A stretch of 64,000 nucleotides of DNA from positions 62,001 through 126,000 of the IMG/VR virus record IMGVR_UViG_3300027759_000046. The stretch is one strand, 5' to 3'. The notes beneath the pieces were generated by a model. That model was not told where the DNA came from and made no database searches. It saw only the letters and a program-made list of their open reading frames with translations. Position numbers and translations under genes: made by a program. Positions 2,429 through 47,311 of the stretch are shown here, piece after piece (the first letter of the stretch is position 1; each line of letters starts with the position of its first letter).

Positions 2429-4411
2429 TTAGTTTTGTGCTCTTCTTTTGAGAGCGTCTAGATAGCTATTTGAATAACCTCTTAGACTTTCGTTTACTTG
2501 TACTAACGATATGTAGCCCTCTTTACCTTGGCTTTCGTTAATTGTTTGATTATTTATATTATTTGCTTGCGCAATTCTTTCATTTACTGTTCTAAGATCG
2601 CGAGAATCCCAGAATGCTTTAGCTTGATAAGGAGTGTTGATCACTTGAGTAGAAGCTTGAGCAGCCATCCAATTACGTTCAGCATCATTCATACTTTCAA
2701 ATACTGTTTTGTATTTTTCTGGCATGAAACGAACGTAAGCTGGAGTGTTTTCCGTTTGTTTATTCATTACTGATTCCATGATATTGATAACTTCACCTTC
2801 AGTAAAGAAGATAGCGCCTCTCATAGTTTCAACGATTGCTGTTTTAGTATCAGCATCCAAAGCATAGAATTTTTGCTTGTTAGATTCACTAAGAAGTTTC
2901 AAGAAAGGATATTTGTTTTCAAGAACTGCATTCGCTGAATTAGATTTGATATGAGATAAGATACCGTCAACTGCGTTAGCTAATTCATCAACTCCTGAAG
3001 CATCTGTAACTTCGTAGCTTGCACTTTCGTTAAGTTTCTTAACGTCAGATAACAATCTGCGAGCTTTGATATTTGTGTTTGGAGTAATCTTTTCATTCAT
3101 TGTTTCAGCGATGTACTCAGAATAAGCAATTCCTTTCTGTACGTTTTCGCCAAGATACTCAGAATATTTGATTGCTGCATCTAGGTTTTCAGCTAAGTAG
3201 TTTGCAAATTTAATACCTTTTTCAGCATTCTCTGCAACGTATTCAGCGTATTGAATTCCTTTGTCAACGTTCTGAGCTAAGTAGTTTGAGTAAGCAATAT
3301 TCTTCTCAACGTTTTCAGCAACATACTCGCCGTAATTGATAGATTGGTTAACTTTCTCTCCTAGATAATCAGAGTATTGAATGTTTTTCTCAACTTTTTC
3401 TGCTAAGTAATCACCGTAATCGATAACGTTGTTAACTTTTTCTGCAACATGCTCAGTATATCCAATACCTTTATTTAGCATGGTTGAAAGGTAGTTTGAA
3501 TACTCAACCATTTTTTCCATTTCACTTGCTAAGTAATTTACATACTCAACTAGTTTTCCAGTTTCTGGTGATTCATTGCTATTTTCATTAAGAGAGCGAA
3601 TTCCAGCGTTGTTTTTCGAAAGGTTTTCTTGAAGAGCATCGAATTTCTTCTTAACCAATTGCGAATACTGGTTCATTTCTTCTCTTGATACAAAGTCATT
3701 AGCCATTTGCTTATTATTATTTTGTTGTTTAGTGATTTCAGAATTATTTATTCTATAGATCTTTACAGAATCTTCAAATGAGAAGCTTTCTGATATATCT
3801 GTTAACTTATTTGTGATGGAAGTTGTCTTAATGCCGTCCAAAGACTCAAAAAGTACAGAAAAATTGTCCCTTAAGCTCTCAGAAACCTGAGTTAGGGAAG
3901 CTTGTGAGAATCCTGGTTCAGCAACGATATCGTAAGTAAAGATTTTTTGAATCTTAACGACTCCGCTCTCGTTTACGTTACCTGCTGCTCTTGATGAAGT
4001 TGAGATTGTACAACCTGACTCAACTAGAGTCTTTGCAATACGACCACATGGAGTATCAAGAACTTTAAGTTTAATACGAACAGTATTTGAAGGTTCGTCA
4101 TAAGTAAGAGCTTCAACCACGTGAGAAACGTTCTTTAGGGAAACGTCAAAACTTTGTGGATGGTCTAACTCTCCGAATAACTGACCCTTTTGGATCTTCT
4201 CATTTAGATATGAAAGATGAGGCAAGTACTCTTGCTTCTCATAGATACGATTGTTCTCGTTCTTTTGTCCAAAGACTGCACAAATACCCTCAAGGATAAT
4301 TGAGCCATCGTTTGATTTTGAAACGTTCAACGCTTCGTTAACTCGCTCGATGATGAATAATTGACTATCATCGAAGCCAGTCTTTAGTAAGTTTGTTTTA
4401 GCGCTAGTCAA
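2429..4411 (-). CDS. Prohead core protease (gp21-like) fused to a scaffold-like repeat region
   Basis: LEGICAV..KNENNRIY, GELDHP, SSRAAG, TYDIVAEPGF motifs; long helical C-terminal region; TTG start. Confidence 0.9.
   Translation of the reverse strand: MTSAKTNLLKTGFDDSQLFIIERVNEALNVSKSNDGSIILEGICAVFGQKNENNRIYEKQEYLPHLSYLNEKIQKGQLFGELDHPQSFDVSLKNVSHVVEALTYDEPSNTVRIKLKVLDTPCGRIAKTLVESGCTISTSSRAAGNVNESGVVKIQKIFTYDIVAEPGFSQASLTQVSESLRDNFSVLFESLDGIKTTSITNKLTDISESFSFEDSVKIYRINNSEITKQQNNNKQMANDFVSREEMNQYSQLVKKKFDALQENLSKNNAGIRSLNENSNESPETGKLVEYVNYLASEMEKMVEYSNYLSTMLNKGIGYTEHVAEKVNNVIDYGDYLAEKVEKNIQYSDYLGEKVNQSINYGEYVAENVEKNIAYSNYLAQNVDKGIQYAEYVAENAEKGIKFANYLAENLDAAIKYSEYLGENVQKGIAYSEYIAETMNEKITPNTNIKARRLLSDVKKLNESASYEVTDASGVDELANAVDGILSHIKSNSANAVLENKYPFLKLLSESNKQKFYALDADTKTAIVETMRGAIFFTEGEVINIMESVMNKQTENTPAYVRFMPEKYKTVFESMNDAERNWMAAQASTQVINTPYQAKAFWDSRDLRTVNERIAQANNINNQTINESQGKEGYISLVQVNESLRGYSNSYLDALKRRAQN
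3091..3553 (-). repeat. 11 tandem 14-aa repeats (xIxYxEYLAExxxK) in the protease-scaffold
   Basis: LVEYVNYLASEMEK through GIAYSEYIAETMNE, counted in the translation. Confidence 0.9.
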
Positions 4412-5443: not shown

Positions 5444-7234
5444 GTGAAACCAGCCATATTTACCTATTACAACAAAGCCGTCGAGTCAGTATTCTTTGAC
5501 AATATTGAATCCTTGATTAGAAATTCAGAACCGAATGCCTATTCAAAAATTATTATCTGTACAGAAGAAGAATTACCAAAGGCAATAATCTCTAAACTTA
5601 GGAGAGTTATGCCAATTGTAAGAACTTATCCAAATAGCCTATCTCAAAATTTATTAGATTTAGCGAAAGGCCCAATGTTTGTAAATCCTCTACTCTTGAG
5701 CGCATTTTCGCAATACGATCAAACTCTTACAGTATTTGATTCTTCAATATACGTAACCTCTGCTGTAACAAATTCAAATTTTCAAAACTGGTTCTATCAA
5801 TCACATCATGGCAAGATAAGTCATCAACTGTTTAAGATAACGCCGACTATCCAATTGTATCAGAGTGCGCGTGCATTTATGAGCTCAATGAAGCCAAGCG
5901 ATCCAGACAGCCTAAACGTATTTAGTTACTTTATTATAAACTGTCAATTACTGGCAACCAAGCATATTGTACCAGAAAAGTTAATTTTTTCAAATCCAAA
6001 ACCGGAAGATGTAATTAAATTGAATAGGCTCGTTGCAATTTCAACAATAAATCCAGTAGCCTCTCCGGAAAGGATTCGCGAAATCATAAAGACCCGTGCG
6101 GACCTATTGAGTTCACAAAAGCCTAGGCTTCTCTCAGCAATAATTTCAAAATTTTATAACTACATTGATCAACTGTCTTCGCCTGACGAGTTTGAAGATG
6201 ATGGCAAAACTTACATGCCTAGCACGCTAATCGTTGAAGTTCCGACAAATGATCCAACTTCTGCTGGCATTTCTCGAATGTTAAGGCTTGCAGTTGAACT
6301 ACCTCATTCAAATACAACAGCAGGCGGAATAACTGAGACTCTAAAACTTGCAAAGAAAATTCCAACTTCACCTCTAATCAGATTTCAAAGAATTACTGGA
6401 AGTTATCCTATCGACCTTGACCTACACTGGACAGTCGGTCTGCCGGATAACACTTTTCCAGAATGTGATGCCTGCATAACATATTCAGATAATCCATACC
6501 TAAATCAGCTAGTTAGTTTACCTCAAGTTGATAAAGTTATTCTGTACATGTTATCATACGGCATGGCAATCGATCGAGAACGCGCAAACGTTTTAAATCC
6601 AGACGTAATAGTCACATGTTCAACCAAAAAACTTGAAGAAGCAATTGCAAAAGAAGGAGTAAAAGTTCATAGAATCGGATTTGGTTTAGATATGGATCAC
6701 ATGTATGTCGACCCAAAAATTAAACGCAATAAGTATTTAGCTCTACTCTATCACCCATCATTGGCTAAACGATATGATTTAGGTGTAAAAATTGCAAACG
6801 CACTCTATTCAAACGGAACGATTGATGGAGTAATAACAGTCGGTTCATCAGTTAATTACGACATGCACAAGCATCCAATTGGACTCGTTAAACATTATCC
6901 GAATGCAAAACCAGCAGAGGTTAGAGCAGTTTTTAATCAAACTCAATGTTTTTTAATGCCATCAATTACTGAGGGTCTAAATCTTACACCAATTGAATCT
7001 ACTCTATGTGGATGCCCAGCAATTATTTGTGACGGCGCAATCAATGAAATATTTTATGAATCTCAAAACTGTAAAATTGCAAGAATTGATAATGAATCAC
7101 AAATGATTAATTTAGCAACTGATATTATTCAAAATTTCGATTTGTACTCTGAAAAATTCATGACCGATATGCAGGCAAGAGTTGCTGAAAATACTTGGGA
7201 AAATGTTGTTAAAAAATTAAATGAACTAATATAA
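5444..7234 (+). CDS. Glycosyltransferase, C-terminal GT4 (GT-B) domain with unknown N-terminal domain
   Basis: FLMPSITEGLNLTPIESTLCGCPAI resembles the GT4 E-x7-E signature. Confidence 0.75.
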   Translation: MKPAIFTYYNKAVESVFFDNIESLIRNSEPNAYSKIIICTEEELPKAIISKLRRVMPIVRTYPNSLSQNLLDLAKGPMFVNPLLLSAFSQYDQTLTVFDSSIYVTSAVTNSNFQNWFYQSHHGKISHQLFKITPTIQLYQSARAFMSSMKPSDPDSLNVFSYFIINCQLLATKHIVPEKLIFSNPKPEDVIKLNRLVAISTINPVASPERIREIIKTRADLLSSQKPRLLSAIISKFYNYIDQLSSPDEFEDDGKTYMPSTLIVEVPTNDPTSAGISRMLRLAVELPHSNTTAGGITETLKLAKKIPTSPLIRFQRITGSYPIDLDLHWTVGLPDNTFPECDACITYSDNPYLNQLVSLPQVDKVILYMLSYGMAIDRERANVLNPDVIVTCSTKKLEEAIAKEGVKVHRIGFGLDMDHMYVDPKIKRNKYLALLYHPSLAKRYDLGVKIANALYSNGTIDGVITVGSSVNYDMHKHPIGLVKHYPNAKPAEVRAVFNQTQCFLMPSITEGLNLTPIESTLCGCPAIICDGAINEIFYESQNCKIARIDNESQMINLATDIIQNFDLYSEKFMTDMQARVAENTWENVVKKLNELI

Positions 7235-7989
7235 TGACCAACGTAATAATTATCCCAGTTCACAATCAAGTATTTCACCTAAAGGCTTGTATTGAAAGTA
7301 TTAAGAAACATACAAAGAATTATTCTCTAATAATAGTCGACGACGGCTCAACTGATTATGAGACGGTTAAATGGATCGATGATTTACCTGATAAGATATT
7401 GATTCGTCATACTAAAGCAATGGGATTCTCTAAAGCATGTAATGACGGAATCGACTATGCTATAAAATATCTAGACTTTAACATTTTATGTTTGCTAAAT
7501 AGCGATACCGTAATTGTTACGCCAGACTGGTTAGATAAAATGGAGACAGAATTCAGTAAATTTGATAAGCCTGGGGTTGCAAGTGTTGTTAGCGATAATG
7601 CAACAACTCAAACAATACACAATCCTGCGAAATATTTAACTCAAATCGATACTAAACCGACCTTTAAGTCCCAACTAATTCATGGATTCTGTTATTTCAT
7701 GAGCCGCGAAGTCATCTTAACTCTCGGCAGATTTGATGGAGACCTATTTCCACATTACGGCAGTGAAGACGATTATTCGTTAAAATGTATAAGAAACGGG
7801 TTCACAAATTTCGTAGTCGGCAGCATCTTTATTAAACACAATGCTTCGACTAGCTATTCAGCGGAACGCCGAGAAGCCTTAATTGCAAAAAGCGTGCCGG
7901 CTCTATTAACCAGATGGACTCGGCAGTACGTTAGCGAATGCATAAACAGAAGTCTTCACATTCAAAAAATGCTAAACGAAAATGTATGA
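7234..7989 (+). CDS. GT2 family glycosyltransferase
   Basis: IIIPVHN, IVDDGSTD, GFSKACNDG, LLNSDT, GSEDDYSL. Confidence 0.9.
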   Translation: MTNVIIIPVHNQVFHLKACIESIKKHTKNYSLIIVDDGSTDYETVKWIDDLPDKILIRHTKAMGFSKACNDGIDYAIKYLDFNILCLLNSDTVIVTPDWLDKMETEFSKFDKPGVASVVSDNATTQTIHNPAKYLTQIDTKPTFKSQLIHGFCYFMSREVILTLGRFDGDLFPHYGSEDDYSLKCIRNGFTNFVVGSIFIKHNASTSYSAERREALIAKSVPALLTRWTRQYVSECINRSLHIQKMLNENV

Positions 7990-8635
7990 TATAAATCACA
8001 TATCCATGCAAGAATGGGCAGACCTAGTTAAAGAATATGCCAACTTTGAACCTCAATCAATCATGGATATTGGGGCAATGGATGGAGCGGATACTGAAAC
8101 TCTAGAATCAAATTTTAAAACAGGTAACGTTTACATAATTGAACCTCACCCAGTTCTCTATTCACGAATTTGCAAAAATCGGCCAGAGTTCAAGAGCTTT
8201 AATTTTGCAGCGTCCAACCAAACCTCTGAACTCGAATTCAATACTATCAATATTGAAAATTCAAACTTGGGGATCTCTTCATTATATGAAAGAGTTGACG
8301 ATTTAAGTTGGGCCTTGCCTAGTCAATTTGACAAGACCTCAGTAAAGTCAATGCGAATGGACGAATTTATGGAGTCTCAACAGATTGATACAATTGATCT
8401 ACTTAAAATAGATGTTGAAGGACACAGCTTTGAAGTATTAAAAGGATTTGGCGAACGTCTTAAATCAATCAAATGTATTCACATAGAAAATGAACATACT
8501 GAGGTCTGGAAAAATCAAAAACTATATCCAGAAGTAGAACCTATTCTGGTAAATAATGGATTCGTAATGCTCTCAATTAAAGTCGGATGGCCTCAAACTG
8601 ACTCAATCTGGATTCAAAAAAACTGTTTAAAATAA
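7982..8635 (+). CDS. FkbM-family methyltransferase
   Basis: DIGAMDG, IEPHP, IDLLKIDVEGH. Confidence 0.88.
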   Translation: MYDINHISMQEWADLVKEYANFEPQSIMDIGAMDGADTETLESNFKTGNVYIIEPHPVLYSRICKNRPEFKSFNFAASNQTSELEFNTINIENSNLGISSLYERVDDLSWALPSQFDKTSVKSMRMDEFMESQQIDTIDLLKIDVEGHSFEVLKGFGERLKSIKCIHIENEHTEVWKNQKLYPEVEPILVNNGFVMLSIKVGWPQTDSIWIQKNCLK

Positions 8636-20557: not shown

Positions 20558-21003
20558 GCTTCGTTCATTGGAGTAATTTGGCCACCACATTCGCAAGTCA
20601 TGTCTTCATTACATTCTTGTGATTCGTAAGTCATATTACACTCATTGCAAGAGTATAAACCTTCAGCCATTTCGTCGATTTCCTCTCCGAATTTTTTAAT
20701 TGGGCCTTCTGCTTCAGCTTCCGGTGCTCCATTTAATTCATTCATAAGAAAATCAGCAACCTCTTCGATATCGTCTTTCGATGTTGCAATATGATCGGCT
20801 GCCCAATCATGGCCGTTGTGAAGTAGTTGATTAACTTGAGTCTCGTCCATTTCCAACATTATATCAATTAGTCTCTTAATTGTTTTAAGATTACCAAAGA
20901 ACATGTAATGATCAACCTCTTCAGAACCAGCTTGCGCCATTTCAGGATTAGTCATTTTAGGATCTTGTTCAAATGCTTCAAACGTTTTTACTAAATTTTT
21001 CAT
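20551..21003 (-). CDS. Putative head protein with C-terminal Cys cluster
   Basis: MKNLVKTFEAFE; CNEC..CxC. Confidence 0.55.
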   Translation of the reverse strand: MKNLVKTFEAFEQDPKMTNPEMAQAGSEEVDHYMFFGNLKTIKRLIDIMLEMDETQVNQLLHNGHDWAADHIATSKDDIEEVADFLMNELNGAPEAEAEGPIKKFGEEIDEMAEGLYSCNECNMTYESQECNEDMTCECGGQITPMNEAW

Positions 21004-22535
21004 TATTGATTATTATTTTGTTTTAGAAAATCTGAAAACTCAAGAATATGAGTTGCTTTCTTTTTCTTCTTTTTTATTGGGCTGAAATTATCGCCTGAAC
21101 CTAGAGAGGTTGGTGTAGGCGGTGTGATTGGTCCCATTGAACCAATTGAGCCGGGTACCTGTGCCGAAACTCCAGGCGCTCCAGCCTCTTCAAACGCAGC
21201 TTCTTTTTTAACATCGAGTACTGATGGTCCGGGAATGAACATGCGGCTTATTGCATCGCCTTTCATTTCGCCTTCTCGACCCTTCAGCGCTTTACCAACA
21301 ACCATAGCTGTTTTATTTAGGGTCTTAGCGTAAATATTGTGAACCAATGATCCAAAATTGGCAAATGCTTGCCCTGCCGGAGTCATTGGCTTGTTGTCTG
21401 GGCCAAGTAAAAGATCCATTAAAGAAGATAATCCTCTACGGAACTTCATGATCCTAGAATCATCCGCAATCTGCTTGCCAGTCACAGGTAGAGCAACTCG
21501 CTCATATAATTTAAGTTTCTTATTAAAATCAAAATGAATTCCCTTGGTTCTATCAAGTTGAATACTTTTGCTTCTAGCCTTTTCGCGTAATGCTATTTTA
21601 GCTTGAGTTAATAGGTCTTCCAGATACTTGATTGTTTCAGGATGACTTGCTTTACGCAATTTAGTCTGGCCCTTTAGTCCGTTAATCTTAATATCAATAT
21701 TGTTTAGTTCTGTTTCTAATTCTTTCTCTGTCTGAAAATTACCAATATTTAATTCTAAGATTCGACGCAAGATTGTTGCCTCTTCTCTGGTAAAACCTGA
21801 TGATTGGCCTGAAAGTGTTTCAAATCGCTCTTCTCCAATCTCTTCTTTAATCTTATCTTCAGTATATCGTTTAGCTCTCTCAAACTCTACTTTATCTTCC
21901 TCTGGGAAATCTTCAATTATTTCTTCAACTACCGTCCAATCACTTATAATCTCGTCAGCAATCTCTTCCTTTTCTTCAACGGTTTCAGCAGTTTGGATTT
22001 TATCTAAGTTAAGTTGATTTGCTTTACCAGCGCCAGTAATAATCACCAAATAAGAGCTCTCTAACGAGCGTTGAACATCTTCAATTTTTCTTGAAATTTC
22101 TTCAGCAACTTGTTTTACTTGAGCATCTTCTCTGGCTTTGAGTTTGTCGTACATGTCGTCGAGCACGCTAATCCTCTTTGCTATTTGTGCCTGCTGCTTA
22201 GCTAATGACTTAAGTAAATCATTGTGTGCAGTACCGCCCTTTGCAAATTCGTCCTTAATTAATCGGCTGATTCTATCAAGTCTATTTTTGCAGTATTTTA
22301 GGTAATTTTCAACATTGTGTTTGGATTTAATAATATCCTCCTCTTTCCACGCTTCGACCTTAATTGCCTGATCTATTAAGTTATCAAGAAATTCGTCCAT
22401 CTTTTTTAGCGCATCAAGCTGTTCTGTTGTGTACTCAGAAGAGTCCACATCAGGTTCACCAGAGCCGATTTGAATTAAATTGGCCTCTGCGAGTAAATCC
22501 TCTAGGTGTTTAAATCTTTTTACTTTTAGAAACAT
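21003..22535 (-). CDS. Long coiled-coil protein, putative virion component
   Basis: Helical acidic/basic heptads; LLAE near the N-terminus; C-terminal ILEFSDFL. Confidence 0.55.
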   Translation of the reverse strand: MFLKVKRFKHLEDLLAEANLIQIGSGEPDVDSSEYTTEQLDALKKMDEFLDNLIDQAIKVEAWKEEDIIKSKHNVENYLKYCKNRLDRISRLIKDEFAKGGTAHNDLLKSLAKQQAQIAKRISVLDDMYDKLKAREDAQVKQVAEEISRKIEDVQRSLESSYLVIITGAGKANQLNLDKIQTAETVEEKEEIADEIISDWTVVEEIIEDFPEEDKVEFERAKRYTEDKIKEEIGEERFETLSGQSSGFTREEATILRRILELNIGNFQTEKELETELNNIDIKINGLKGQTKLRKASHPETIKYLEDLLTQAKIALREKARSKSIQLDRTKGIHFDFNKKLKLYERVALPVTGKQIADDSRIMKFRRGLSSLMDLLLGPDNKPMTPAGQAFANFGSLVHNIYAKTLNKTAMVVGKALKGREGEMKGDAISRMFIPGPSVLDVKKEAAFEEAGAPGVSAQVPGSIGSMGPITPPTPTSLGSGDNFSPIKKKKKKATHILEFSDFLKQNNNQ

Positions 22536-22536
22536 A

Positions 22537-22959
22537 TTACTTTTGTTGCAATAAGTATTGCGTTTTGTTAGTTAAGTCTAAGATTTCATCTGCTAAGTTG
22601 TAAAGCTCTGAATCCTCATCTCGGTCAAACAGGTTTCTAAAGGTTCCGCGTAATGCATCGTTCACCAATTCAAAGAATACTGGCAATGCCATCTCGTAAT
22701 CGTAGATCATTACAGCAGCCTCTCCGAATTTAAGGTTTTGTGAACCGTATTTACCAGCAATTGCCTCAACGATCGTGTCCATTTGATCGATGAACTCTTC
22801 GTAGAACATACCGAAATGGCGATGTTCTGTATCTAGACCAGTTTGCCAGTGAATTATTTTAGCCTGATCAGCAATTTGCATTAGTGAAAGCATGAAATAG
22901 CCGATTGTAGCCTTGTCCTGCATTTCTTGTGGTTCTGTTAAATCTTCCATTCCGAACAT
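22537..22959 (-). CDS. Ferritin/Dps-like four-helix protein (DUF5856-like)
   Basis: KIIHWQT..EHRHFGMFYE..DTIVEAIAGKYG..DEILDLTNKTQYLL. Confidence 0.65.
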   Translation of the reverse strand: MFGMEDLTEPQEMQDKATIGYFMLSLMQIADQAKIIHWQTGLDTEHRHFGMFYEEFIDQMDTIVEAIAGKYGSQNLKFGEAAVMIYDYEMALPVFFELVNDALRGTFRNLFDRDEDSELYNLADEILDLTNKTQYLLQQK

Positions 22960-23141
22960 TATGATTTATGTAATTTTTGTCGCTTTTCCCAAGATTTAAA
23001 AGGTGTCACCCAGAAATTACGTTCAATATTCTTTTGTAAGTAATCGTATACGTCATTTCCTTCAGGATGCTGCATGACAGCATTCTTTAGAGGTTCTTTG
23101 CCCTTTCTCCAGTTTTCAACGTTTTTATGAGTCTTCTCCAT
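22959..23141 (-). CDS. Small hypothetical protein
   Basis: Operon-coupled ORF with an AATAAATA motif upstream. Confidence 0.55.
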   Translation of the reverse strand: MEKTHKNVENWRKGKEPLKNAVMQHPEGNDVYDYLQKNIERNFWVTPFKSWEKRQKLHKS

Positions 23142-23208
23142 ACTAGGTTATTTATTAAACAAAGAAGGGCCGCTTTTGGCGACCCTATTCAGTGTATGTA
23201 TAATTTGA

Positions 23209-26160
23209 TTACTTTGTAAATATGTTGAATATATTATGATTCTGTGGGTCCTGCCACATTGGTCCACTGCGGCATTCAAGATGCTTTTTAAATTCTTTAA
23301 AGCCTGCATCGACTTTACAATAGACAATCTCAGATGAGTTTACGACTGCTAGTACTGAAAACTCATCAACTTTAGCGTAATATAAAATATGATGCCATCC
23401 TAAAAAGTTTATGAATTCCTGTTCGTTTCGGCTATTCTCAAAAAAGTCTTTAATTCCAGCAAGCAAGTCATCTTCATGGCCGCAACCCGTTTCCCAAATT
23501 CCTCCAGAAAAAATAGAGGCAAACCATCTCTCAAAGTCTTCAATAACTTGAGGTTCATTTGAAAATTCCTCTGAGATAAGATCAAAAAGAGGTAACCATG
23601 TTTGGTTGAGCCATATTCTATTAATTGTGAATAACCTAGCTCTTGGATCATTTTTTAAAATATCTTCACAAAACTCAACAATCTTTAAATTTTCGCCAAC
23701 GATTAACTTAAGTTCTTCAAGCTTTTTAATTATTACTGAGCGACCGTTGACAAAACCTGCTCTTGATGATATTAATCTGCCGCTGTTCCCCTTAACCTCA
23801 ATATTAACCGGGCCTGCAGCAATATCACCTTCGCCTGCTTTCTTTTTACCATCTTTAAACAATATTGAAATTAGCTCGCCCTTTCCCTTTCCTTGAGTAT
23901 TTCCAATTTTATTAGTTATCTGAAACCTTAGAATGGTCTTAAATATTTCGGGATTAACTCCAAAGTCCTGAGCCGTTAATTCTCCAGAAGACGATATGTT
24001 TGAAATATCGTAGCCTTTACCGCCCGCTATTGTTTCGTAGAAACTTTCAAGGTCAGCGGCTGATTCATTTAGAATATCACCACACTCTTGAGCAAAAGAT
24101 TCTGCATCGGTGCTTAAATATCCACGGTTAATCAATTCTTCCGCAATTTTCCCTAATGTGTCAGAAGATTCGTGCATAGACATCTCCTTTTTAAGTTTAG
24201 CTAAGATGCTAGAATATTTATCGGGTGAAGATTTTCTTAGTTTTTTTAAACTATCAAATTCTCTTTCTGACTCGTGATCATCGTCTGTCCGTGGAACTTC
24301 ATTTGCAAAATTTGCCTCAACTGCTTCGTTTAACTTAGGCTGTGCCAATTCGTTAATATCGCGATTCATATTGAAAAATTCTGAGTGAATTGCTTGAGGT
24401 GCAGCTGATTTAAAATTTTGATAATCTTCAGATCTTAACGAGTTCATAATCGAATCTTTAACTCCAGCAATTGGTAATTCAACTAGAGAAACGTCATTTC
24501 TAAAATTAAGATTTCGTGATCTCTTTTTAGCTAATTCCATTTGTAAAGCCAAGTCCTTGATTCGACTCTTTGTTCCAGATATAATAACTGGTTCAAAATC
24601 AGGTTTGATTGCTCTCAATAAGTTCTCAACCTCTCCGTCCTGTACCATTCGGTGGCCGGTGATAAAGCTTGGGTGTTGCGAAGTAACTTTGTCTAAACAG
24701 CCTTTAACGGTTTCTTGTTTAAAAGGTTTAGTCTTATTTACTGAACCGTCATGAATGCATACCATTAAACACGGATAGCCATTCATATCAAACAATTTCT
24801 GTGCAGATTTAAGATGACCTGGGTGAAAGGGTTGAAAATCTGAGATGATTAAGTTAACTCTTTTGGATTTACGTTCGTTATCTGGAACTTCTGCAAAGGT
24901 TTCAAAATAACCAAGATCTCGCTCTTCTCCAACAAATTCGCTGAATGTTGGAAAGTAATTCTCGTAAACAGCATCACCTAATAGGACATTACTAATCTTC
25001 TCAATTTGAGAAACCAGATTAGCTCGCATTGGCTTGGTGAAGAATGTTGAACTAACTCGAACCGTTTTCTTTCTAAACATATTTAAGAAGACTCGATAAA
25101 TCTCCTTGTAGTTAGGATTCGACTCAATAATCTGAGTAACCTTTTTGTCGTGAATAAGGTCGAAATTTACGTTAAAGTCTTCTCTTCTCAGGAATTCTGG
25201 AATTTGAATATCTAAGTCAATGTATTTTTCGCCGAACTCAGAAATGAATTCTAAATAGATGTGATTGACTAGCGAAATATATTTTTGCTCGTATGAATCT
25301 CCTTTAAGTGGAATTTCTCGCAATTCGCTAAGTGAATATCTCTCAATAAAATTCATTAAGTCGATAACAATAATCCAAATATAGTCGTCCGATTTCTTTT
25401 GAACTCGGTCTTGTGCTTTTTGTTTTGCATTCGCCTGAAATACTGGATCTACTAATTTAGCCAAGAAGACTGAATCTTCTGAGTTATTGTTGGGATCGTA
25501 AAAACGAAATACCAAACCTTCAATATCTTTGTCTAGAGTATCCCTTAGGAACGTTGTTCCAAGCTCAGGATTTAGAACTGACACAATATACTTCGTGAAT
25601 GATGTTGTCTTAAATTTATCAACCAATTCTTCGAAAGGCGTGTAGATGAATTCATGCATTTTCTCTTTTTGATCTGGAGAAAGCTTGCCTTGAAATACGA
25701 TCGGTGGACGTTCAATATTTAAAATATCAGCCCATTTGTCAAGAGTATCTTTATCTTGAATAGTCTCCGACATCTCGCCCTTTTCATCAAGGATATGAAT
25801 GTAGCTTAAGATTAAGCCATTTTTAGGAAGTCTATCGTATGCAATAGTTTGTGCTTTTGGGCTAGTAAACCACTCCATTCCGAAATGGTAGTTATCTGGT
25901 ACTTTGCTTACGGTATCAGGCCCAAGGCTCTCAAAGTGTCTAATAGCCGGCTCAAAGTAACGGCTGAGTACTCTATCGATGTACGTAATCTCTGCGTTCC
26001 TCTTAAAGAAGCGGAACTTACCCGTGCTAGGGTCTTTTTGGGCGCCAAAGAAGGCCCCATCCATTTTCTCATTTACAATTACTGTTTTGTTTAAAAGGCC
26101 TTCTAAGAATTCCTTTCCGCGTTTATCATAAACGTCTCTTAAGTGTGATAGTCCTGGCAT
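23209..26160 (-). CDS. Multidomain protein: ATP-dependent (RNA) ligase-like, HxGH nucleotidyltransferase, PD-(D/E)xK nuclease-like
   Basis: NEKMDG (motif I), FGMEWF, IEGLVFR, LAKL; DFQPFHPGHLK; GEGDIAAGPVNIEVKG. Confidence 0.7.
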   Translation of the reverse strand: MPGLSHLRDVYDKRGKEFLEGLLNKTVIVNEKMDGAFFGAQKDPSTGKFRFFKRNAEITYIDRVLSRYFEPAIRHFESLGPDTVSKVPDNYHFGMEWFTSPKAQTIAYDRLPKNGLILSYIHILDEKGEMSETIQDKDTLDKWADILNIERPPIVFQGKLSPDQKEKMHEFIYTPFEELVDKFKTTSFTKYIVSVLNPELGTTFLRDTLDKDIEGLVFRFYDPNNNSEDSVFLAKLVDPVFQANAKQKAQDRVQKKSDDYIWIIVIDLMNFIERYSLSELREIPLKGDSYEQKYISLVNHIYLEFISEFGEKYIDLDIQIPEFLRREDFNVNFDLIHDKKVTQIIESNPNYKEIYRVFLNMFRKKTVRVSSTFFTKPMRANLVSQIEKISNVLLGDAVYENYFPTFSEFVGEERDLGYFETFAEVPDNERKSKRVNLIISDFQPFHPGHLKSAQKLFDMNGYPCLMVCIHDGSVNKTKPFKQETVKGCLDKVTSQHPSFITGHRMVQDGEVENLLRAIKPDFEPVIISGTKSRIKDLALQMELAKKRSRNLNFRNDVSLVELPIAGVKDSIMNSLRSEDYQNFKSAAPQAIHSEFFNMNRDINELAQPKLNEAVEANFANEVPRTDDDHESEREFDSLKKLRKSSPDKYSSILAKLKKEMSMHESSDTLGKIAEELINRGYLSTDAESFAQECGDILNESAADLESFYETIAGGKGYDISNISSSGELTAQDFGVNPEIFKTILRFQITNKIGNTQGKGKGELISILFKDGKKKAGEGDIAAGPVNIEVKGNSGRLISSRAGFVNGRSVIIKKLEELKLIVGENLKIVEFCEDILKNDPRARLFTINRIWLNQTWLPLFDLISEEFSNEPQVIEDFERWFASIFSGGIWETGCGHEDDLLAGIKDFFENSRNEQEFINFLGWHHILYYAKVDEFSVLAVVNSSEIVYCKVDAGFKEFKKHLECRSGPMWQDPQNHNIFNIFTK

Positions 26161-26165
26161 AGTAT

Positions 26166-26744
26166 TTAGTCTAATGAACCGTAATCGCCTCTACTCATTG
26201 CTGCTGCAAATTCTCTGTCGGAGTGTGAATCCTTAGTGATATTGAAGCGAACGGCATCGGCTGCGAGTTCTTGATTTTGTTTTAAAAATTGAATAAGTGC
26301 AAGTGTATCGATATCTTGGTATTCGCCAGATCCTCCAAATTCTACAAGTTGTTTCTCTAATCCTCTTACTTCTGGAATTTCAAAAAGCCAAATTCTGAAA
26401 GTGACGATTTCTCCATGAGACGCTGATCTTTCTGACATCTCGGTTAGATGGTTTACTATTTGCTCGAGTGCATCAGCTTGGTCAAGAGGTCTTTCCCAAA
26501 CTTTCCATTCTTTACCTTCACGATTTATATTTACTGAAGTAGACGTGCCTGACCCAGTCGGTACTGAAATTGACATTAGATTTGGGCATAATTCCATTAT
26601 CTCAGCTAGATCACCTGCAAAATGTTCAATCGTTTCGCCACGTAATCCGTGATCAGTTGCCAGGCCCTTGTTCTTTAGCCAGTTCAGGCGCTCTCGTCTA
26701 GCGGATTCAGATATGAAATCGGTAAAGCCTTTAAGATTTTTCAT
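26166..26744 (-). CDS. Putative head cargo protein
   Basis: MKNLKGFTDFISE; WLKNKGLA motif. Confidence 0.55.
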   Translation of the reverse strand: MKNLKGFTDFISESARRERLNWLKNKGLATDHGLRGETIEHFAGDLAEIMELCPNLMSISVPTGSGTSTSVNINREGKEWKVWERPLDQADALEQIVNHLTEMSERSASHGEIVTFRIWLFEIPEVRGLEKQLVEFGGSGEYQDIDTLALIQFLKQNQELAADAVRFNITKDSHSDREFAAAMSRGDYGSLD

Positions 26745-26760
26745 GCAAGATACTTTCTTG

Positions 26761-27369
26761 TTATTTATTAGGCTCGATGCCTAAAAGTCGATAGCATTCA
26801 TTATTAAATAGGGTCGCAGATAATTCATCAAAATGATTAAACACAAGGCTTAGACCATTTTCGGACTCAGAATTTGAAAGCCATGATCTTCCGATATCTA
26901 ATAGATGTGCCATTTGAGACTGTTCTTCTTGCGTTGAATGAGCTCCGTCCCAAGTATCTTTAGTACGACCAGAATCTCCAGTTTGACCTGCGACTGATAC
27001 GACTAGAGTTTTGCAGTTTTTAAATAGATCAGAACTTAGCAGCGAGAAATATTCTAACTCAGCTTTAGTTTTAGTTAATCGACCACGTAGAATTGCCCAA
27101 GTGTATGCTGAAACAATTGCTCTGTCAAATACCCAGATTTTATCCTTGTATTCTGGACGCTGATTCATTTCCATAATGGTCATGATGTTGCCAAGACTAA
27201 AATAGTGTAGGCTTGGACTCTTTTCGTCTGACACCATGTCAAGAGTCTTAACGTGATTTGCGAAATAGAATTTATAATACTCTAATCTTGGATCATTACA
27301 GGTCTCTAGGAAATTGTTAATTAAGAATGTTTTGCCCGAATGTCTTGGGCCTTCGATGAATAATATCAT
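26761..27369 (-). CDS. P-loop nucleotide/polynucleotide kinase-like protein
   Basis: ILFIEGPRHSGKT Walker A; WVFDRAIVS. Confidence 0.75.
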   Translation of the reverse strand: MILFIEGPRHSGKTFLINNFLETCNDPRLEYYKFYFANHVKTLDMVSDEKSPSLHYFSLGNIMTIMEMNQRPEYKDKIWVFDRAIVSAYTWAILRGRLTKTKAELEYFSLLSSDLFKNCKTLVVSVAGQTGDSGRTKDTWDGAHSTQEEQSQMAHLLDIGRSWLSNSESENGLSLVFNHFDELSATLFNNECYRLLGIEPNK

Positions 27370-27896
27370 ATTAGTTTTAATCTTTCTGAGTTACCAAATT
27401 CTTCAAGGGACCGTGCTGTATCCCAATCGATTGTAATTATTTTACTCTTATCTACGAAAATAAAGTCAATATCAATATTAATCCCTGCATCTAGGAACCA
27501 TGCCGTGTATTTAATGATCTCCCAAAGAGAGTCTTCGTATATCGTAATTGAGGTTGCTTCGTGCTCGCGAATTAAGTCTATCGCAATTTCAGCCTTATCT
27601 CCTTCTCTGCCGAGGAAAAAGGTCTTTTCAAATCGAATTTGATGATCTGCCAATAATTCAATAACTCTAGGCTGACATGCCTTAACTCTATGGGTTATTA
27701 GATAGTTTAGACAGTCGTCCTTGGTTCGATCTATCGTATTTTTAATACCCCGAATGTTGAATTTTTGATCTAGTGATTCTGGCGAATCAAACCATTCGTA
27801 GGGCTCTTTACCTTTAGCTTCACTGCATGTGTAACCGGGTACCCTAAATAGGGTTTCGTCAAAATCAAAGATATTAATGTGAGTGCTATTTTTCAT
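27366..27896 (-). CDS. HAD-superfamily phosphatase (RNA-repair Swiss-army-knife-like HAD)
   Basis: NIFDFDETLFRVP, LITHR, ITIYEDS. Confidence 0.72.
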   Translation of the reverse strand: MKNSTHINIFDFDETLFRVPGYTCSEAKGKEPYEWFDSPESLDQKFNIRGIKNTIDRTKDDCLNYLITHRVKACQPRVIELLADHQIRFEKTFFLGREGDKAEIAIDLIREHEATSITIYEDSLWEIIKYTAWFLDAGINIDIDFIFVDKSKIITIDWDTARSLEEFGNSERLKLI

Positions 27897-30523: not shown

Positions 30524-31309
30524 TTATCTTTCTTGAATTTCTTCGACTGCCCATTCTGTAAAAAGCTTTTGTGCAGTCTGTGCAAATTTATTAGGCCTTT
30601 TGCTAATCTCGTTTAAATCATTCCAAATTTGTTCAGCTTTAATCTTTTCTTTTTGTAATTCTTCGCGAATGTTGTCTGCGTCAGTCTTAAACTGTGCAAG
30701 CTCATCAGGGACGTCCGCTAGGCCCAACTTAACAAGTCTTAAAAATCTTGGATCATGTGCAATTCTAATTAATTCCGCCCATTCCTCTTCATCGTCTCTT
30801 GCCTCAGTTTTAGTATCATGATATGTCATTAGTTCGTCTTCGATCGAATTAACAAAATCTTCGCCGGTTGTATCTGGTACAATAATTAACCAGCCACCGC
30901 TATTGCCGCCCCAACCGGTATTGTCAATCCACGAATAGTACTCTTGAATATCTTCTTGAAAAAATTCTCTCTGGTCTTGAATCCAACTCCACCACATGCT
31001 ATCAAGCTCATCATCACTTAATTCGTCTTCAGTCATTCCAACTGCCTGTCTAATTGTCTCAAAGTCTGGCCACGTATGAATTTTTGCATCGATTGCAAAA
31101 TGACCTTCTCGAATATTGCGGCTCTCTCTATTCCACCAATACTCGTTTTCAAGTTCTCCCCACATGCGTTCAACGTCGTCCATTAGTTCAGGAATCCCTT
31201 CTTCGAAATAAAAGTCTCCATAGTCTCGGCCATAGTCTCTTGATAGAGTCGTCAGAACCTCATTCCATCTGCGTGCTTCAGTAATAAATTGTGAGAATGT
31301 TTTTACCAT
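30524..31309 (-). CDS. Putative head cargo protein, acidic
   Basis: MVKTFSQFITE; RLVKLGLA motif. Confidence 0.6.
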   Translation of the reverse strand: MVKTFSQFITEARRWNEVLTTLSRDYGRDYGDFYFEEGIPELMDDVERMWGELENEYWWNRESRNIREGHFAIDAKIHTWPDFETIRQAVGMTEDELSDDELDSMWWSWIQDQREFFQEDIQEYYSWIDNTGWGGNSGGWLIIVPDTTGEDFVNSIEDELMTYHDTKTEARDDEEEWAELIRIAHDPRFLRLVKLGLADVPDELAQFKTDADNIREELQKEKIKAEQIWNDLNEISKRPNKFAQTAQKLFTEWAVEEIQER

Positions 31310-45438: not shown

Positions 45439-45443
45439 TAATA

Positions 45444-46508: not shown

Positions 46509-46533
46509 TAGTATAACCCTTTTTTTGTAGGGT

Positions 46534-46541
46534 TATTTATA
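46534..46541 (-). promoter_or_regulatory. T4-type late promoter TATAAATA
   Basis: Exact match about 25 nt upstream of the 46508 start. Confidence 0.75.
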
Positions 46542-47301: not shown

Positions 47302-47311
47302 GTAAAATAAA

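What the first reader, a model, noticed from the sequence alone, without database searches (positions are those of the whole stretch)
23209..26160. Ligase-nucleotidyltransferase-nuclease polyprotein with internal LNE sites
The 983-aa protein joins three modules. First, a ligase-type adenylation domain with motifs I (EKMDG), III, IV (EGLVFR) and V. Second, an HxGH nucleotidyltransferase. Third, a C-terminal PD-(D/E)xK-like domain (GD..IEVKG). Linkers contain PKLNE|A and ILNE|S plus a CTS-like TFSEFVGE, so the prohead protease may split it into modules. Inference: a virion-delivered nucleic-acid cut-and-repair or nucleotide-cofactor enzyme, possibly countering tRNA-cleaving or NAD-depleting defences.
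Basis: partly seen in the sequence, partly recalled or inferred. Interest (0 to 1): 0.66.

Follow-up and report, generated by a model that had tools for sequence, protein, structure and literature searches.

The report
Phage RNA ligase–NMNAT-like–nuclease fusion enzyme
A freshwater jumbo phage encodes a 983-residue enzyme that joins an RNA ligase, an NAD-synthase-like nucleotidyltransferase and a restriction-enzyme-like domain, and it sits behind a phosphatase and a kinase gene, so it most likely repairs RNA cut by host defences rather than being a capsid-processed polyprotein.

Summary
The ORF is real: 983 aa on the minus strand of window 23209-26160. All three modules hold up.

- **RNA ligase, aa 1-395.** It passes the Pfam RNA_ligase cut-off, keeps K32, and folds like Trl1 and T4 Rnl2.
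- **HIGH-superfamily nucleotidyltransferase, aa 433-606.** It is closest to archaeal NMN adenylyltransferase (TM about 0.7).
- **Probable PD-(D/E)xK domain, aa 713-983.** E762, D779, E788 and K790 are invariant or nearly so across a Pfam-less phage family. Structural matches to HhaI, MspI and HinP1I are weak.

The ligase-NTase pair is a conserved ~600-aa core in uncultured T4-like jumbo phages, all labelled "hypothetical protein". The nuclease domain is a lineage-specific addition.

In about 50 related loci the gene follows a DxDxT HAD phosphatase (HAD_SAK_1 type) and a small P-loop kinase. I read this as an RNA end-healing and sealing cassette. The role of the NTase domain is unknown.

Capsid delivery and protease splitting are not supported. 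The protein lacks the T4-like N-terminal leader that at least 11 other proteins of this phage carry. Its four-gene unit also ends in its own terminator.

One puzzle remains. A leader-like (L/V/I)(N/T)E motif marks the core boundary in 95 of 95 family members that have a C-terminal extension.

The parts
23209..26160 (-). Whole gene: 983-aa ligase / HIGH-NTase / REase-like protein (P0001)
   Evidence: Full-length homologues are 57-81% identical.
25447..26160 (-). RNA-ligase adenylyltransferase domain, aa 1-238. Motif I EKMDG (K32), III FGMEW, IV EGLVFR, V LAKLVDP.
   Evidence: Pfam PF09414 at 29.6 bits, above the cut-off of 27. PHROG 548 'RNA ligase'. Foldseek matches Trl1-LIG, T4 Rnl2, T4 Rnl1 and REL1. 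Motif conservation.
24976..25446 (-). All-helical domain after the ligase, aa 239-395. Very strongly conserved (KSDDYIW..DLMN.IE; KEIYR..N.FRKK).
   Evidence: It is covered by the long Foldseek alignments to Trl1-LIG and Rnl2, which also have helical C-domains.
24865..24975 (-). Flexible linker, aa 396-432, with the conserved linear motif ENYFP(T/S)FxEF(V/I)G and GYFE.
   Evidence: Low pLDDT. The motif core is conserved but the last residue varies among E, D, T and Q.
24343..24864 (-). HIGH-superfamily nucleotidyltransferase domain, aa 433-606. FQPFHPGH (H446, H449) and IHSEFF.
   Evidence: Profile against PDB sequences hits only NMNAT, NadR and NadM, best 1f9a at E 0.0024. Foldseek: archaeal NMNAT TM 0.67-0.72, then NadD and PPAT. 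Pfam CTP_transf_like is below its cut-off.
24274..24342 (-). Disordered acidic linker, aa 607-629, holding PKLNE|A (aa 608-613). DINE|L (aa 601-605) lies just upstream of it.
   Evidence: pLDDT below 50 for aa 608-629. [LIVM][NT]E[SANT] is present in 95 of 95 members with an extension.
24025..24273 (-). Helical bundle, aa 630-712, leading into the C-terminal domain. It holds the non-conserved ILNE|S.
   Evidence: Standalone relatives of the C-terminal domain also carry an N-terminal stretch of about 80-130 aa.
23212..24024 (-). Restriction-endonuclease-like (PD-(D/E)xK) domain with a large helical insert, aa 713-983. Candidate catalytic residues are E762, D779, E788 and K790.
23166..23186 (-). 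Terminator-like hairpin (8 pairs, 6 G-C, T-rich tail), 23 nt after the stop codon
   Evidence: A contig from an RNA library ends at 23188 (weak evidence).
26166..26744 (-). 192-aa ORF (P0140) immediately upstream, with a T4-CTS-like leader MKNLKGFTDFISE|S
   Evidence: A leader-bearing small ORF sits between kinase and ligase in about 23 related loci.
26761..27369 (-). 202-aa P-loop kinase (P0138): EGPRHSGKT, FDRA..SAY, R.KD
   Evidence: Weakly like dNK, TMPK and AAA_28. Conserved upstream of the ligase gene in about 50 loci.
27366..27896 (-). 176-aa HAD phosphatase (P0139): FDFDETL (DxDxT), THR, R..K, EDS. First gene of the unit; it overlaps the kinase gene by 4 nt.
   Evidence: Homologues match Pfam HAD_SAK_1, best E 3.5e-10 in 5 of 14. 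Conserved in about 50 loci.
2429..4411 (-). Context only: 660-aa ORF with an N-terminal T4-gp21-type prohead protease domain (Peptidase_S77). Relevant to the processing hypothesis.

Best explanation
The gene encodes the sealing enzyme of an RNA end-healing and sealing cassette that works inside the infected cell.

**Proposed pathway.** The unit runs from 27896 to about 23166 on the minus strand.
1. A HAD (DxDxT) phosphatase removes 3'-terminal phosphate.
2. A small P-loop kinase phosphorylates 5'-OH ends.
3. The N-terminal module of this protein rejoins the ends. It is a classic ATP-dependent RNA ligase that would form a lysyl-AMP intermediate on K32, with its helical C-domain.

The likely substrates are tRNAs or other RNAs cut by host ribonuclease defences. 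This is the same logic as T4 Pnkp plus Rnl.

**The two other modules.**
- Fused to the ligase in every family member is a HIGH-superfamily nucleotidyltransferase of archaeal-NMNAT type. I infer it transfers AMP from ATP to a 5'-phosphate. The acceptor is either NMN (making NAD+) or a nucleic-acid or nucleotide end. Which one cannot be settled here.
- The C-terminal restriction-endonuclease-like domain is a later, lineage-specific addition. It is normally a standalone phage protein. It probably cuts nucleic acid, either trimming damaged ends or attacking competitor or host DNA, as proposed in the literature for Rnl2-HNH fusions.

**Shown versus inferred.** Shown: domain identities, conservation of catalytic motifs, gene order, family distribution. 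Inferred: substrates, the pathway, and the cellular rather than capsid site of action.
For: **Domains.**
- Ligase: Pfam above its cut-off, PHROG 'RNA ligase', and Foldseek matches to Trl1, Rnl2, Rnl1 and REL1.
- Ligase motifs: motif I Lys in 84 of 87, motif IV acid and motif V K235 conserved.
- NTase: only NMNAT-type hits by profile and the best structural matches.
- NTase motifs: FQP and the second His invariant in a 23-sequence alignment and at least 90% conserved in 91; the first His mostly kept.

**Operon.**
- HAD, then kinase, then an optional small ORF, then ligase-NTase, in about 50 of 62 IMG/VR loci, down to 43% ligase identity. The same order holds in a 269-kb contig with a short-form gene.
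- The HAD and kinase ORFs overlap by 4 nt.
- The HAD family has invariant DxDxT, (T/S)HR, K and ED motifs. Members match HAD_SAK_1, the 'Swiss Army Knife RNA repair' HAD, at E 3.5e-10.

**Literature.** Jumbo phages pair RNA ligases with polynucleotide kinases and SAK-type or PNK-type HAD phosphatases. They often carry several ligase paralogues, and Rnl2-HNH nuclease fusions exist (PMC7824862, section 3.4.9).

**This genome.**
- Two more PF09414 ligases, an AAA_33 kinase and 24 tRNA genes.
- A separate ATP-dependent DNA ligase, so this enzyme is not needed for replication.
- Contigs of a lake metatranscriptome library, 100% identical, lie across the unit.

**C-terminal domain is accessory.**
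- It is absent from the 602-690-aa forms and from four related genomes estimated at 92-100% complete.
- It exists as standalone 330-430-aa proteins, 352 cluster representatives.
Against: - The kinase looks more like small-molecule nucleoside or nucleotide kinases than like known polynucleotide kinases. Its matches are dNK 6ybh at E 0.016 and Thymidylate_kin, AAA_28 and dNK neighbours. The genome's AAA_33 PNK-like gene lies elsewhere.
- The query's own HAD protein does not reach HAD_SAK_1 directly. Its only hit is a weak 5'-nucleotidase match. Membership rests on homologues.
- No known RNA-repair pathway needs a HIGH NTase, so one third of the conserved core is unexplained.
- Ligase motif V has one Lys, not the KxK of Rnl1 and Rnl2 (the KxK is from my memory).
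- The most distant relatives (27-40% identity) lack the HAD-kinase neighbours.
- No activity has been measured for any family member. All are 'hypothetical protein'.
- The RNA-library contigs cannot prove transcription or timing.
Confidence: 0.55

Rival explanations
1. NAD+ (or related dinucleotide) salvage is the core function. The P-loop kinase is a nucleoside kinase such as a nicotinamide riboside kinase. The HIGH domain is a true NMN adenylyltransferase. Together they form a split NadR. The HAD enzyme is a nucleotidase, and the ligase is merely co-encoded. The cassette would restore NAD+ after depletion by host NADase defences.
For: - The NTase is closest to archaeal NMNAT, NadR and NadM by sequence profile and by fold.
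- The kinase's neighbours are Thymidylate_kin, dNK and AAA_28. From memory, AAA_28 is the Pfam family of the NadR kinase domain.
- The HAD gives weak 5'-nucleotidase hits.
- Jumbo phages are known to carry NadR-like NTase-kinase fusions (PMC7824862, PMC9503650).
- Kinase plus HAD phosphatase plus HIGH NTase is also the logic of ADP-heptose synthesis (established pathway).
Against: - There is no NadV/NAPRTase in a genome about 94% complete.
- The NTase falls below the Pfam cut-off.
- The residue before FQP is Asp or Glu in most members, where NMNAT-type enzymes have Arg, Lys or Thr (comparison from memory).
- The ISxTxxR-like string is not conserved.
- This reading does not explain why the NTase is fused to an intact RNA ligase in every member, nor the HAD_SAK_1 affinity.
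Confidence: 0.2
2. The protein is packaged into the prohead and cut by the gp21-type protease at (L/I/V)(N/T)E sites. This releases ligase-NTase and nuclease modules that are injected with the DNA.
For: - The genome encodes a Peptidase_S77 protease and a gp23-like capsid protein.
- At least 11 proteins start with a T4-IP-like leader ending F[ILV][NTSA]E. A loose form of the motif is 5.6-fold enriched at N-termini.
- The same kind of motif lies in the only long disordered linker. It is present in 95 of 95 members with an extension, although the extensions are otherwise unalignable.
- A leader-bearing gene sits directly upstream in many lineages.
- The 602-aa forms end just before the motif.
Against: - The protein has no N-terminal leader and there is no room for one upstream.
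- [LI]xE is not enriched overall, 15 against 13.8 expected.
- The second site and the 'CTS-like' Glu are not conserved.
- The unit diverges from the helicase operon, has no TATAAATA and has its own terminator. The promoter evidence is weak.
- No hub domains of known injected polyvalent proteins were found (PMC5512222).
- The conserved motif could simply be a helix cap at a domain boundary.
Confidence: 0.12
3. The two AMP-transferring modules act on the same polynucleotide end. The HIGH domain would adenylylate an RNA 5'-phosphate to give AppRNA for ligase step 3. Alternatively it would join NMN to a 5'-triphosphate-A RNA, which is post-transcriptional NAD capping.
For: - The fusion is obligate across the family, including relatives that lack the HAD-kinase neighbours.
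- NMNAT chemistry and ligase step 2 both transfer AMP to a 5'-phosphate (established chemistry).
- Three members have lost the ligase lysine. The two of these visible in the 23-sequence alignment, P0112 and P0116, keep the NTase motifs.
- The unusual acidic residue before FQP hints at a non-standard substrate.
- A review lists NMNATs as unproven candidates for RNA NAD-capping (PMC8131947).
Against: - No HIGH-superfamily enzyme of this type is known to act on polynucleotide ends (my knowledge).
- The ligase lysine is kept in 84 of 87 members, so the ligase can adenylylate by itself.
- There is no direct evidence of any kind.
Confidence: 0.08
4. A DNA-level function. This would be a nick-sealing or 'cut and rejoin' enzyme of replication or recombination, or a restriction-like weapon with a ligase attached.
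For: - The gene lies next to a helicase, and in relatives near a family-B DNA polymerase.
- The C-terminal domain resembles type II restriction endonucleases.
Against: - The genome has its own ATP-dependent DNA ligase.
- The ligase domain matches RNA-ligase families, not DNA ligases.
- The nuclease domain is missing in most family members.
- HAD_SAK_1 and kinase neighbours point to RNA end healing.
Confidence: 0.05

Closest known systems
Phage T4 RNA repair: Pnkp (P-loop kinase plus DxDxT HAD phosphatase) with Rnl1 or Rnl2
   Same: The same three activities are encoded together: a DxDxT phosphatase, a P-loop kinase and a lysyl-AMP RNA ligase. The phage background is T4-like, with gp23-like capsid and gp21-like protease.
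   Different: The kinase and phosphatase are separate small proteins of other families: HAD_SAK_1-like, and dNK/TMPK/AAA_28-like rather than AAA_33. The ligase carries an extra HIGH NTase and here a nuclease-like domain. Motif V has a single Lys.
Fungal and plant tRNA ligase Trl1 (ligase-kinase-CPD in one chain)
   Same: Trl1-LIG is the best Foldseek match (9r3w at E 7e-7; also 9qw7, 6n0t, 6n67, 8rbj). Both are multi-domain, with an adenylyltransferase, a helical domain and then an alpha/beta nucleotide-binding domain.
   Different: The domain after the ligase is a HIGH NTase, not a P-loop kinase. There is no 2H/CPD domain, and no KptA/Tpt1 in the genome. Sequence identity is only 10-13%.
Archaeal-type NMN adenylyltransferase, NadM and NadR (HIGH superfamily)
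   Same: It shares the FQPxHxGH signature and the fold: 1f9a TM 0.72 with rmsd 3.2, and the M. thermautotrophicum NMNAT at TM 0.67-0.72. A P-loop kinase is encoded nearby, as in NadR.
   Different: It is fused to an RNA ligase, not to a Nudix or kinase domain. It falls below the Pfam cut-off. It has an acidic residue where NMNATs have Arg or Lys. There is no NadV partner.
Rnl2-HNH endonuclease fusions of jumbo phages (Iyer et al. 2021, PMC7824862)
   Same: An RNA ligase is fused to a DNA-type nuclease domain in a jumbo phage. This is a precedent for 'repair plus attack' in one protein.
   Different: The nuclease here is C-terminal, of restriction-endonuclease (PD-(D/E)xK) type, and separated from the ligase by a HIGH NTase.
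HinP1I, MspI and HhaI monomeric type II restriction endonucleases
   Same: The helix (E), strand, strand (D), strand (E.K) order matches the PD-(D/E)xK core. These are the only recurrent whole-domain structural matches.
T4 internal proteins and their capsid-targeting leader cut by gp21
   Same: This phage has many proteins with a near-identical N-terminal leader and a gp21-type protease. A leader-end-like motif lies in the target's disordered linker.
   Different: The target has no N-terminal leader. The resemblance is internal only.

Membership tests
Covalent nucleotidyltransferase RNA ligases (Pfam PF09414 RNA_ligase) | Profile match above the curated cut-off | tested here: met
   29.6 bits against a cut-off of 27, over aa 26-236. 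33.6 bits in the genome scan.
Covalent nucleotidyltransferase RNA ligases (Pfam PF09414 RNA_ligase) | Motif I KxDG with the AMP-accepting lysine, plus motifs III and IV | tested here: met
   EKMDG (K32), FGMEW and EGLVFR are present. Lys is kept in 84 of 87 relatives.
Covalent nucleotidyltransferase RNA ligases (Pfam PF09414 RNA_ligase) | Adenylyltransferase fold | tested here: met
   Foldseek matches Trl1-LIG, T4 Rnl2, T4 Rnl1 and REL1, E from 7e-7 to 2e-3.
Covalent nucleotidyltransferase RNA ligases (Pfam PF09414 RNA_ligase) | Lysine adenylylation and RNA sealing activity | not testable with these tools
   Needs purified protein.
Rnl2 family specifically | Motif V KxK and an Rnl2-type C-terminal domain | tested here: inconclusive
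   Motif V is LAKLVDP with one Lys. The KxK expectation is from memory. The helical C-domain was not modelled or searched alone, and Trl1 scores as well as Rnl2.
HIGH-superfamily nucleotidyltransferases (Pfam PF01467 CTP_transf_like) | (H/T)xGH signature at the first strand-helix turn | tested here: met
   FQPFHPGH. The second His is invariant in 23 sequences and at least 90% conserved in 91. The first is His, or Thr/Ser in some.
HIGH-superfamily nucleotidyltransferases (Pfam PF01467 CTP_transf_like) | Profile match above the curated cut-off | tested here: not met
   17.6 and 19.2 bits against a cut-off of 21. One homologue cluster carries the precomputed PF01467 label.
HIGH-superfamily nucleotidyltransferases (Pfam PF01467 CTP_transf_like) | Rossmann-like NTase fold | tested here: met
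   TM 0.67-0.72 to archaeal NMNATs and 0.54-0.62 to NadD and PPAT.
NMN adenylyltransferase (archaeal, NadM or NadR type) | Second ATP motif (SxTxxR-like) and a basic residue before the FxP motif | tested here: not met
   ISGTKSR occurs only in the query's close relatives. Others have AAEPSR or similar. Asp or Glu precedes FQP in most members. The reference motifs are from memory.
NMN adenylyltransferase (archaeal, NadM or NadR type) | Partner enzymes of NAD salvage in the genome (NadV; a Nudix or NR-kinase fusion) | tested here: inconclusive
   There is no NAPRTase. A neighbouring P-loop kinase with weak AAA_28 and TMPK likeness could be an NR kinase.
PD-(D/E)xK nuclease superfamily | Conserved E ... 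D ... (D/E)xK on a helix-strand-strand-strand core | tested here: met
   E762 lies in a helix, D779 at the start of a strand, and E788-x-K790 in the next strand. D, E and K are invariant, and G.GE and GD nearly so, in 66 sequences.
PD-(D/E)xK nuclease superfamily | Significant structural or profile match to a known member | tested here: inconclusive
T4-type capsid-targeted, gp21-processed proteins | N-terminal targeting leader ending in (L/I)xE | tested here: not met
   The N-terminus is MPGLSHLRDVYDK in all homologues. At least 11 other proteins of the genome have the leader.
T4-type capsid-targeted, gp21-processed proteins | Accessible (L/I)xE site and a cognate protease in the genome | tested here: met
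   LNE at aa 610-612 lies in a disordered linker. Peptidase_S77 is present.
T4-type capsid-targeted, gp21-processed proteins | Presence in virions as processed fragments | not testable with these tools
   The phage is uncultured and no proteomics is available.
HAD_SAK_1 / PNK-type RNA-repair cassette (operon level) | DxDxT phosphatase and P-loop kinase encoded with the ligase | tested here: met
   Gene order is conserved in about 50 of 62 loci. HAD motifs are invariant. HAD_SAK_1 is matched by 5 of 14 homologues, best E 3.5e-10.
HAD_SAK_1 / PNK-type RNA-repair cassette (operon level) | Kinase of a polynucleotide-kinase family | tested here: inconclusive
   The nearest are dNK, TMPK and AAA_28, not AAA_33.

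The most novel reading that the evidence does not exclude
The obligate fusion means the two AMP-transferring modules cooperate on one RNA 5' end. The NMNAT-like domain would adenylylate RNA 5'-phosphates or install an NAD-type cap, and the ligase would use or compete for that end. That would be the first HIGH-superfamily enzyme acting on polynucleotide termini. Alternatively, or in addition, the core is released from its C-terminal extension by the prohead protease at the universally conserved (L/V/I)(N/T)E boundary motif. In that case the enzyme would be an injected RNA-repair protein.
Probability: 0.12. Interest if true: 0.85.

Novelty: new variant of a known kind. Interest (0 to 1): 0.55.

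Why it matters
RNA ligase, kinase and phosphatase sets are a known phage answer to tRNA-cutting defences. An RNA ligase permanently fused to an NMNAT-like nucleotidyltransferase is not described in the three comparative surveys I read (PMC7824862, PMC9503650, PMC5512222). Every database copy is labelled 'hypothetical protein'.

The family is large. It has 327 word-search hits and 62 IMG/VR loci, and this phage's own sequence turns up mainly in freshwater, lake and river metagenomes. It therefore offers a defined, testable enzyme.

Possible outcomes:
- It may link RNA repair with NAD metabolism.
- It may reveal a new end-modifying chemistry.
- It may provide a new ligase for RNA work.

The C-terminal domain also defines a Pfam-less, phage-only family of probable nucleases (352 cluster representatives). 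The genome-wide T4-like leaders show that capsid targeting of internal proteins extends to these distant jumbo phages.

Tried and rejected
**Searches that gave nothing useful.**
- phmmer of the whole protein against PDB sequences gave only a spurious coiled-coil hit.
- The ligase-region profile against PDB sequences gave no hits.
- The C-terminal profiles A3 and A8 against PDB sequences gave only chance hits.
- Pfam and PHROG scans of 16 and 66 C-terminal relatives gave nothing.
- PF11463 (R-HinP1I) scanned over the genome gave no match.
- Foldseek of the C-terminal domain against PDB gave no match at E 0.001 or better.
- BFVD returned only uncharacterised phage proteins.
- Megablast of 10 kb against cultured phages gave no match. 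tblastn found only six uncultured huge phages at 24-28% identity.

**Ideas tested and dropped.**
- The 522-aa gene next to the short-form ligase, or the 192-aa upstream ORF, might be a detached C-terminal domain. Neither shows similarity.
- Short-form phages might carry the nuclease domain elsewhere. It is absent from five related genomes, 83-100% complete.
- An NAD link through KptA or 2H: both are absent. NadV and an NAD-dependent ligase are also absent.
- The other CTP_transf_like genes of the window belong to a sugar-nucleotide cluster (PfkB kinase, cupin) and are unrelated.
- The late-promoter argument is weak. TATAAATA occurs 6 times against 5.7 expected, although one copy sits just upstream of the protease gene.
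- Standalone C-terminal relatives lie on contigs too short to give context.

**Not available or not used.**
- The Burroughs and Aravind 2016 RNA-repair paper is not held.
- The third word search was left unused.

Full report
**Observation.** Window 23209-26160 holds one uninterrupted 983-codon ORF on the minus strand. Only 10 further open codons lie upstream of its ATG. The window is bases 62001-126000 of a 253,137-bp IMG/VR virus record estimated 94% complete. GC content is about 38%. No alternative genetic code was needed.

**Domain anatomy: N-terminal ligase.** The full-length AlphaFold2 model, built from 91 aligned relatives, has mean pLDDT 77.
- Residues 1-238 match Pfam RNA_ligase above its curated cut-off (29.6 against 27 bits) and PHROG 548 'RNA ligase'.
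- With the helical domain that follows (aa 239-395), this region gives the top Foldseek matches. These are the fungal Trl1 ligase (E 7e-7), T4 Rnl2 (E 6-9e-6), REL1 and T4 Rnl1.
- The motif I lysine is kept in 84 of 87 relatives. The motif IV acid and K235 of motif V are conserved.

**Domain anatomy: NTase.** A low-confidence linker (aa 396-432) carries the conserved motif ENYFP(T/S)FxEF(V/I)G.
- Residues 433-606 are a HIGH-superfamily nucleotidyltransferase.
- A profile of this region hits only archaeal NMNAT, NadR and NadM among PDB sequences. The best is 1f9a at E 0.0024, and the alignments cover FQPFHxGH.
- The structural matches are archaeal NMNATs at TM 0.67-0.72 and rmsd 3.2-3.9. NadD and PPAT follow.
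- The Pfam CTP_transf_like score stays below its cut-off.

**Domain anatomy: C-terminal region.** Residues 608-629 are the only long disordered stretch and contain PKLNE|A. A helical bundle (aa 630-712) leads into the C-terminal domain.
- Modelled alone (aa 700-983), the domain reaches pLDDT 90.9 and pTM 0.88.
- It has a helix carrying E762, a strand starting at D779, and a strand with E788-V-K790. A helical insert of about 125 aa follows, then more strands.
- Foldseek finds nothing significant in the PDB.
- The ESM-Atlas shape search lists the R.HinP1I family as its first named match. Language-model neighbours are HinP1I, SmaI and Eco47II.
- Each line of evidence is weak, but they agree.
- D779, E788 and K790 are invariant, and G759, E762 and G778 nearly so, in 66 relatives of only 12-35% identity.
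- I therefore call it a probable nuclease-fold domain with about 0.7 confidence.

**Family.** The word search found 327 relatives.
- Among 124 distinct sequences, 17 are core-only (605 aa or fewer; at least 12 of them end right after ...NRDL(S)).
- 51 have short tails (606-700 aa).
- 8 are intermediate (701-900 aa), and 2 of these have the G.GE...GD...E.K signature.
- 48 are longer than 900 aa, and 47 of these have the signature.
- The ligase-NTase pair is thus the conserved core, and the nuclease-like part is an addition.
- Five related genomes, 83-100% complete, lack that domain altogether.
- The word search and family scans left the C-terminal domain open. I therefore used the one exhaustive search on it.
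- That search found 352 cluster representatives, mostly standalone proteins of 330-430 aa. They have no Pfam, PHROG or PDB sequence link.
- All named copies of the core are 'hypothetical protein'.
- Among deposited phages, only six uncultured huge phages match, at 24-28% identity.

**Context.**
- The capsid protein is gp23-like. Its nearest relatives are an uncultured 462-kb phage (38%) and the Lak megaphages (32%).
- The gene is the last of a four-gene minus-strand unit that diverges from a helicase operon.
- The unit ends in a terminator-like hairpin 23 nt past the stop codon.
- Gene 1 (176 aa) is a HAD phosphatase with FDFDETL. Gene 2 (202 aa) is a P-loop kinase. Gene 3 (192 aa) begins MKNLKGFTDFISE|S.
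- In 62 IMG/VR loci, the order HAD, kinase, optional small ORF, then ligase-NTase is kept in about 50. This holds down to 43% ligase identity. It also holds in a 269-kb short-form contig.
- The HAD family has invariant DxDxT, (T/S)HR, K and ED motifs.
- 5 of 14 HAD members match Pfam HAD_SAK_1, 'HAD domain family 1 in Swiss Army Knife RNA repair proteins', with best E 3.5e-10.
- The kinase has invariant EGxRxxGKT, FDR and R.KD motifs.
- The kinase resembles deoxynucleoside or thymidylate kinases and AAA_28 only weakly.
- The most distant relatives (27-40% identity) lack these neighbours.

**Genome inventory.** The genome holds:
- a separate ATP-dependent DNA ligase;
- two further PF09414 RNA ligases next to an AAA_33 kinase;
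- 24 tRNA genes.

It has no NadV, NAD-dependent ligase, KptA or 2H phosphoesterase.

The phage DNA occurs mainly in freshwater, lake and river metagenomes. Eight small, 100%-identical contigs from a lake metatranscriptome library lie across the unit. Their outer ends, at 23188 and 27896, coincide with the hairpin and the first start codon.

**The processing idea: what favours it.**
- The genome encodes a Peptidase_S77 (T4 gp21-type) domain at the start of a 660-aa ORF beside the capsid gene.
- A script over the whole genome found at least 11 ORFs that begin with M-K-x(0-6)-F-x-(Q/E/D)-F-(I/L/V)-(N/T/S/A)-E. From memory, this is close to the T4 internal-protein leader MKTYQEFIAE|A, which gp21 cuts.
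- A loose form of the motif is 5.6 times denser in N-termini than elsewhere.
- The same leaders occur in relatives. They include the small ORF between kinase and ligase in about 23 loci.

**The processing idea: what counts against it.**
- The target has no such N-terminus.
- Its internal TFSEFVGE lies in a family-wide conserved motif, but the last residue varies.
- [LI]xE is not enriched, at 15 against 13.8 expected.
- ILNE|S is not conserved.

**The processing idea: what stays unexplained.** All 95 distinct family members with any extension carry [LIVM][NT]E[SANT], often two or three copies, within 22 residues of the core's end. The extensions are otherwise unalignable. This fits a cleavage site, but it also fits a domain-boundary cap. 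I put processing at about 0.12.

**Mechanism.**
- My best reading (0.55) is an intracellular RNA end-healing and sealing cassette. It is analogous to T4 Pnkp plus Rnl and fits the jumbo-phage pattern of RNA ligases with kinases and SAK-type HAD phosphatases (PMC7824862, section 3.4.9).
- The NMNAT-like domain is the unexplained part. It may make NAD+ in a split-NadR reading with the neighbouring kinase (0.2). It may act on a polynucleotide 5'-phosphate (0.08).
- The nuclease-like domain is an accessory. It parallels the Rnl2-HNH fusions noted in the same paper.

**Novelty.** The three surveys I could read do not mention an RNA ligase fused to a HIGH NTase. They cover jumbo phages, viral NAD+/ADP-ribose systems and polyvalent proteins. 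The key 2016 RNA-repair survey is not held, so prior description cannot be excluded. I rate the finding a new variant of a known kind.

**Limits.**
- No activity has been measured for any family member.
- Model coordinates could not be inspected.
- The reference motifs of T4 Pnkp, NMNAT, NadR and the T4 leader are quoted from memory.

Noticed in passing
Whole genome G000. Examples in the window: 26166-26744(-) and 30524-31309(-). Elsewhere: G000 137990-138577(-), 153652-155340(-), 157896-158663(-), 172454-172918(-), 194715-195122(+), 197402-198001(+), 205353-205979(-), 220763-221971(-).: At least 11 ORFs begin with a T4-internal-protein-like leader, M-K-x-F-x-(Q/E/D)-F-(I/L/V)-(N/T/S/A)-E. Examples are MKTFSQFINEN, MKSFKQFLNEA and MVKTFSQFITEA. 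This suggests a large set of capsid-targeted, protease-trimmed proteins in this distant T4-like jumbo phage. The same leaders occur in relatives down to 27% ligase identity.
   Followed up: partly
window 26166-26744 (-), and the equivalent position in L015-L035, L059-L064 and L073: A small, fast-evolving, leader-bearing ORF (140-198 aa) sits between the kinase and the ligase gene in about 23 loci. It is absent from the 620-aa short-form clade. Its function is unknown, and it is possibly an injected internal protein.
   Followed up: partly
window 2429-4411 (-) and 731-2410 (-): The prohead protease domain (Peptidase_S77, aa 28-221) is only the first third of a 660-aa ORF. The rest could be a fused scaffold. 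An exact TATAAATA lies 21-28 nt upstream of its start. The gp23-like capsid gene follows.
   Followed up: no
G000 127729-128211(-), 131710-132162(-), 132506-132823(-); tRNAs at G000 118413-140279; a tmRNA call at 247539-247907: A second RNA-repair neighbourhood holds two more PF09414 RNA ligases and an AAA_33 (PNK-like) kinase beside an array of 24 tRNA genes. ARAGORN also calls a tmRNA.
   Followed up: no
window 44035-50994 (-): A sugar-nucleotide-like cluster holds a PfkB kinase, a 129-aa cytidylyltransferase-like protein, a cupin, and a 488-aa protein with an internal HIGH-like motif. A 658-aa ClpB-type double AAA+ protein follows.
   Followed up: no
window 5444-8635 (+): Two glycosyltransferases and a methyltransferase lie on the opposite strand between the head genes and the baseplate genes.
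   Followed up: no
C-termini of short-form homologues (P0076, P0080, P0094, P0112, P0116): The 618-636-aa forms end in a conserved ...P.II(Q/E)IE(D/S). This is another I-x-E, at the very C-terminus, after a tail that starts with the (L/I)(N/T)E motif.
   Followed up: no
Homologues P0112 and P0116, plus one other in alignment A5: Three family members have replaced the ligase motif I lysine with N, N or R. P0112 and P0116, the two seen in the 23-sequence alignment, keep the NTase motifs.
   Followed up: no
window 22537-22959 (-) and 22959-23141 (-), 21003-22535 (-): The genes after the terminator are syntenic with the cassette in nearly all loci. They are a 60-aa ORF, a DUF5856 / phrog_858 protein and a 510-aa protein of unknown function.
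   Followed up: no
window 23188 and 27896: Contigs from a lake metatranscriptome library end exactly at the terminator hairpin and at the first start codon of the four-gene unit. Contig ends are weak evidence.
   Followed up: no
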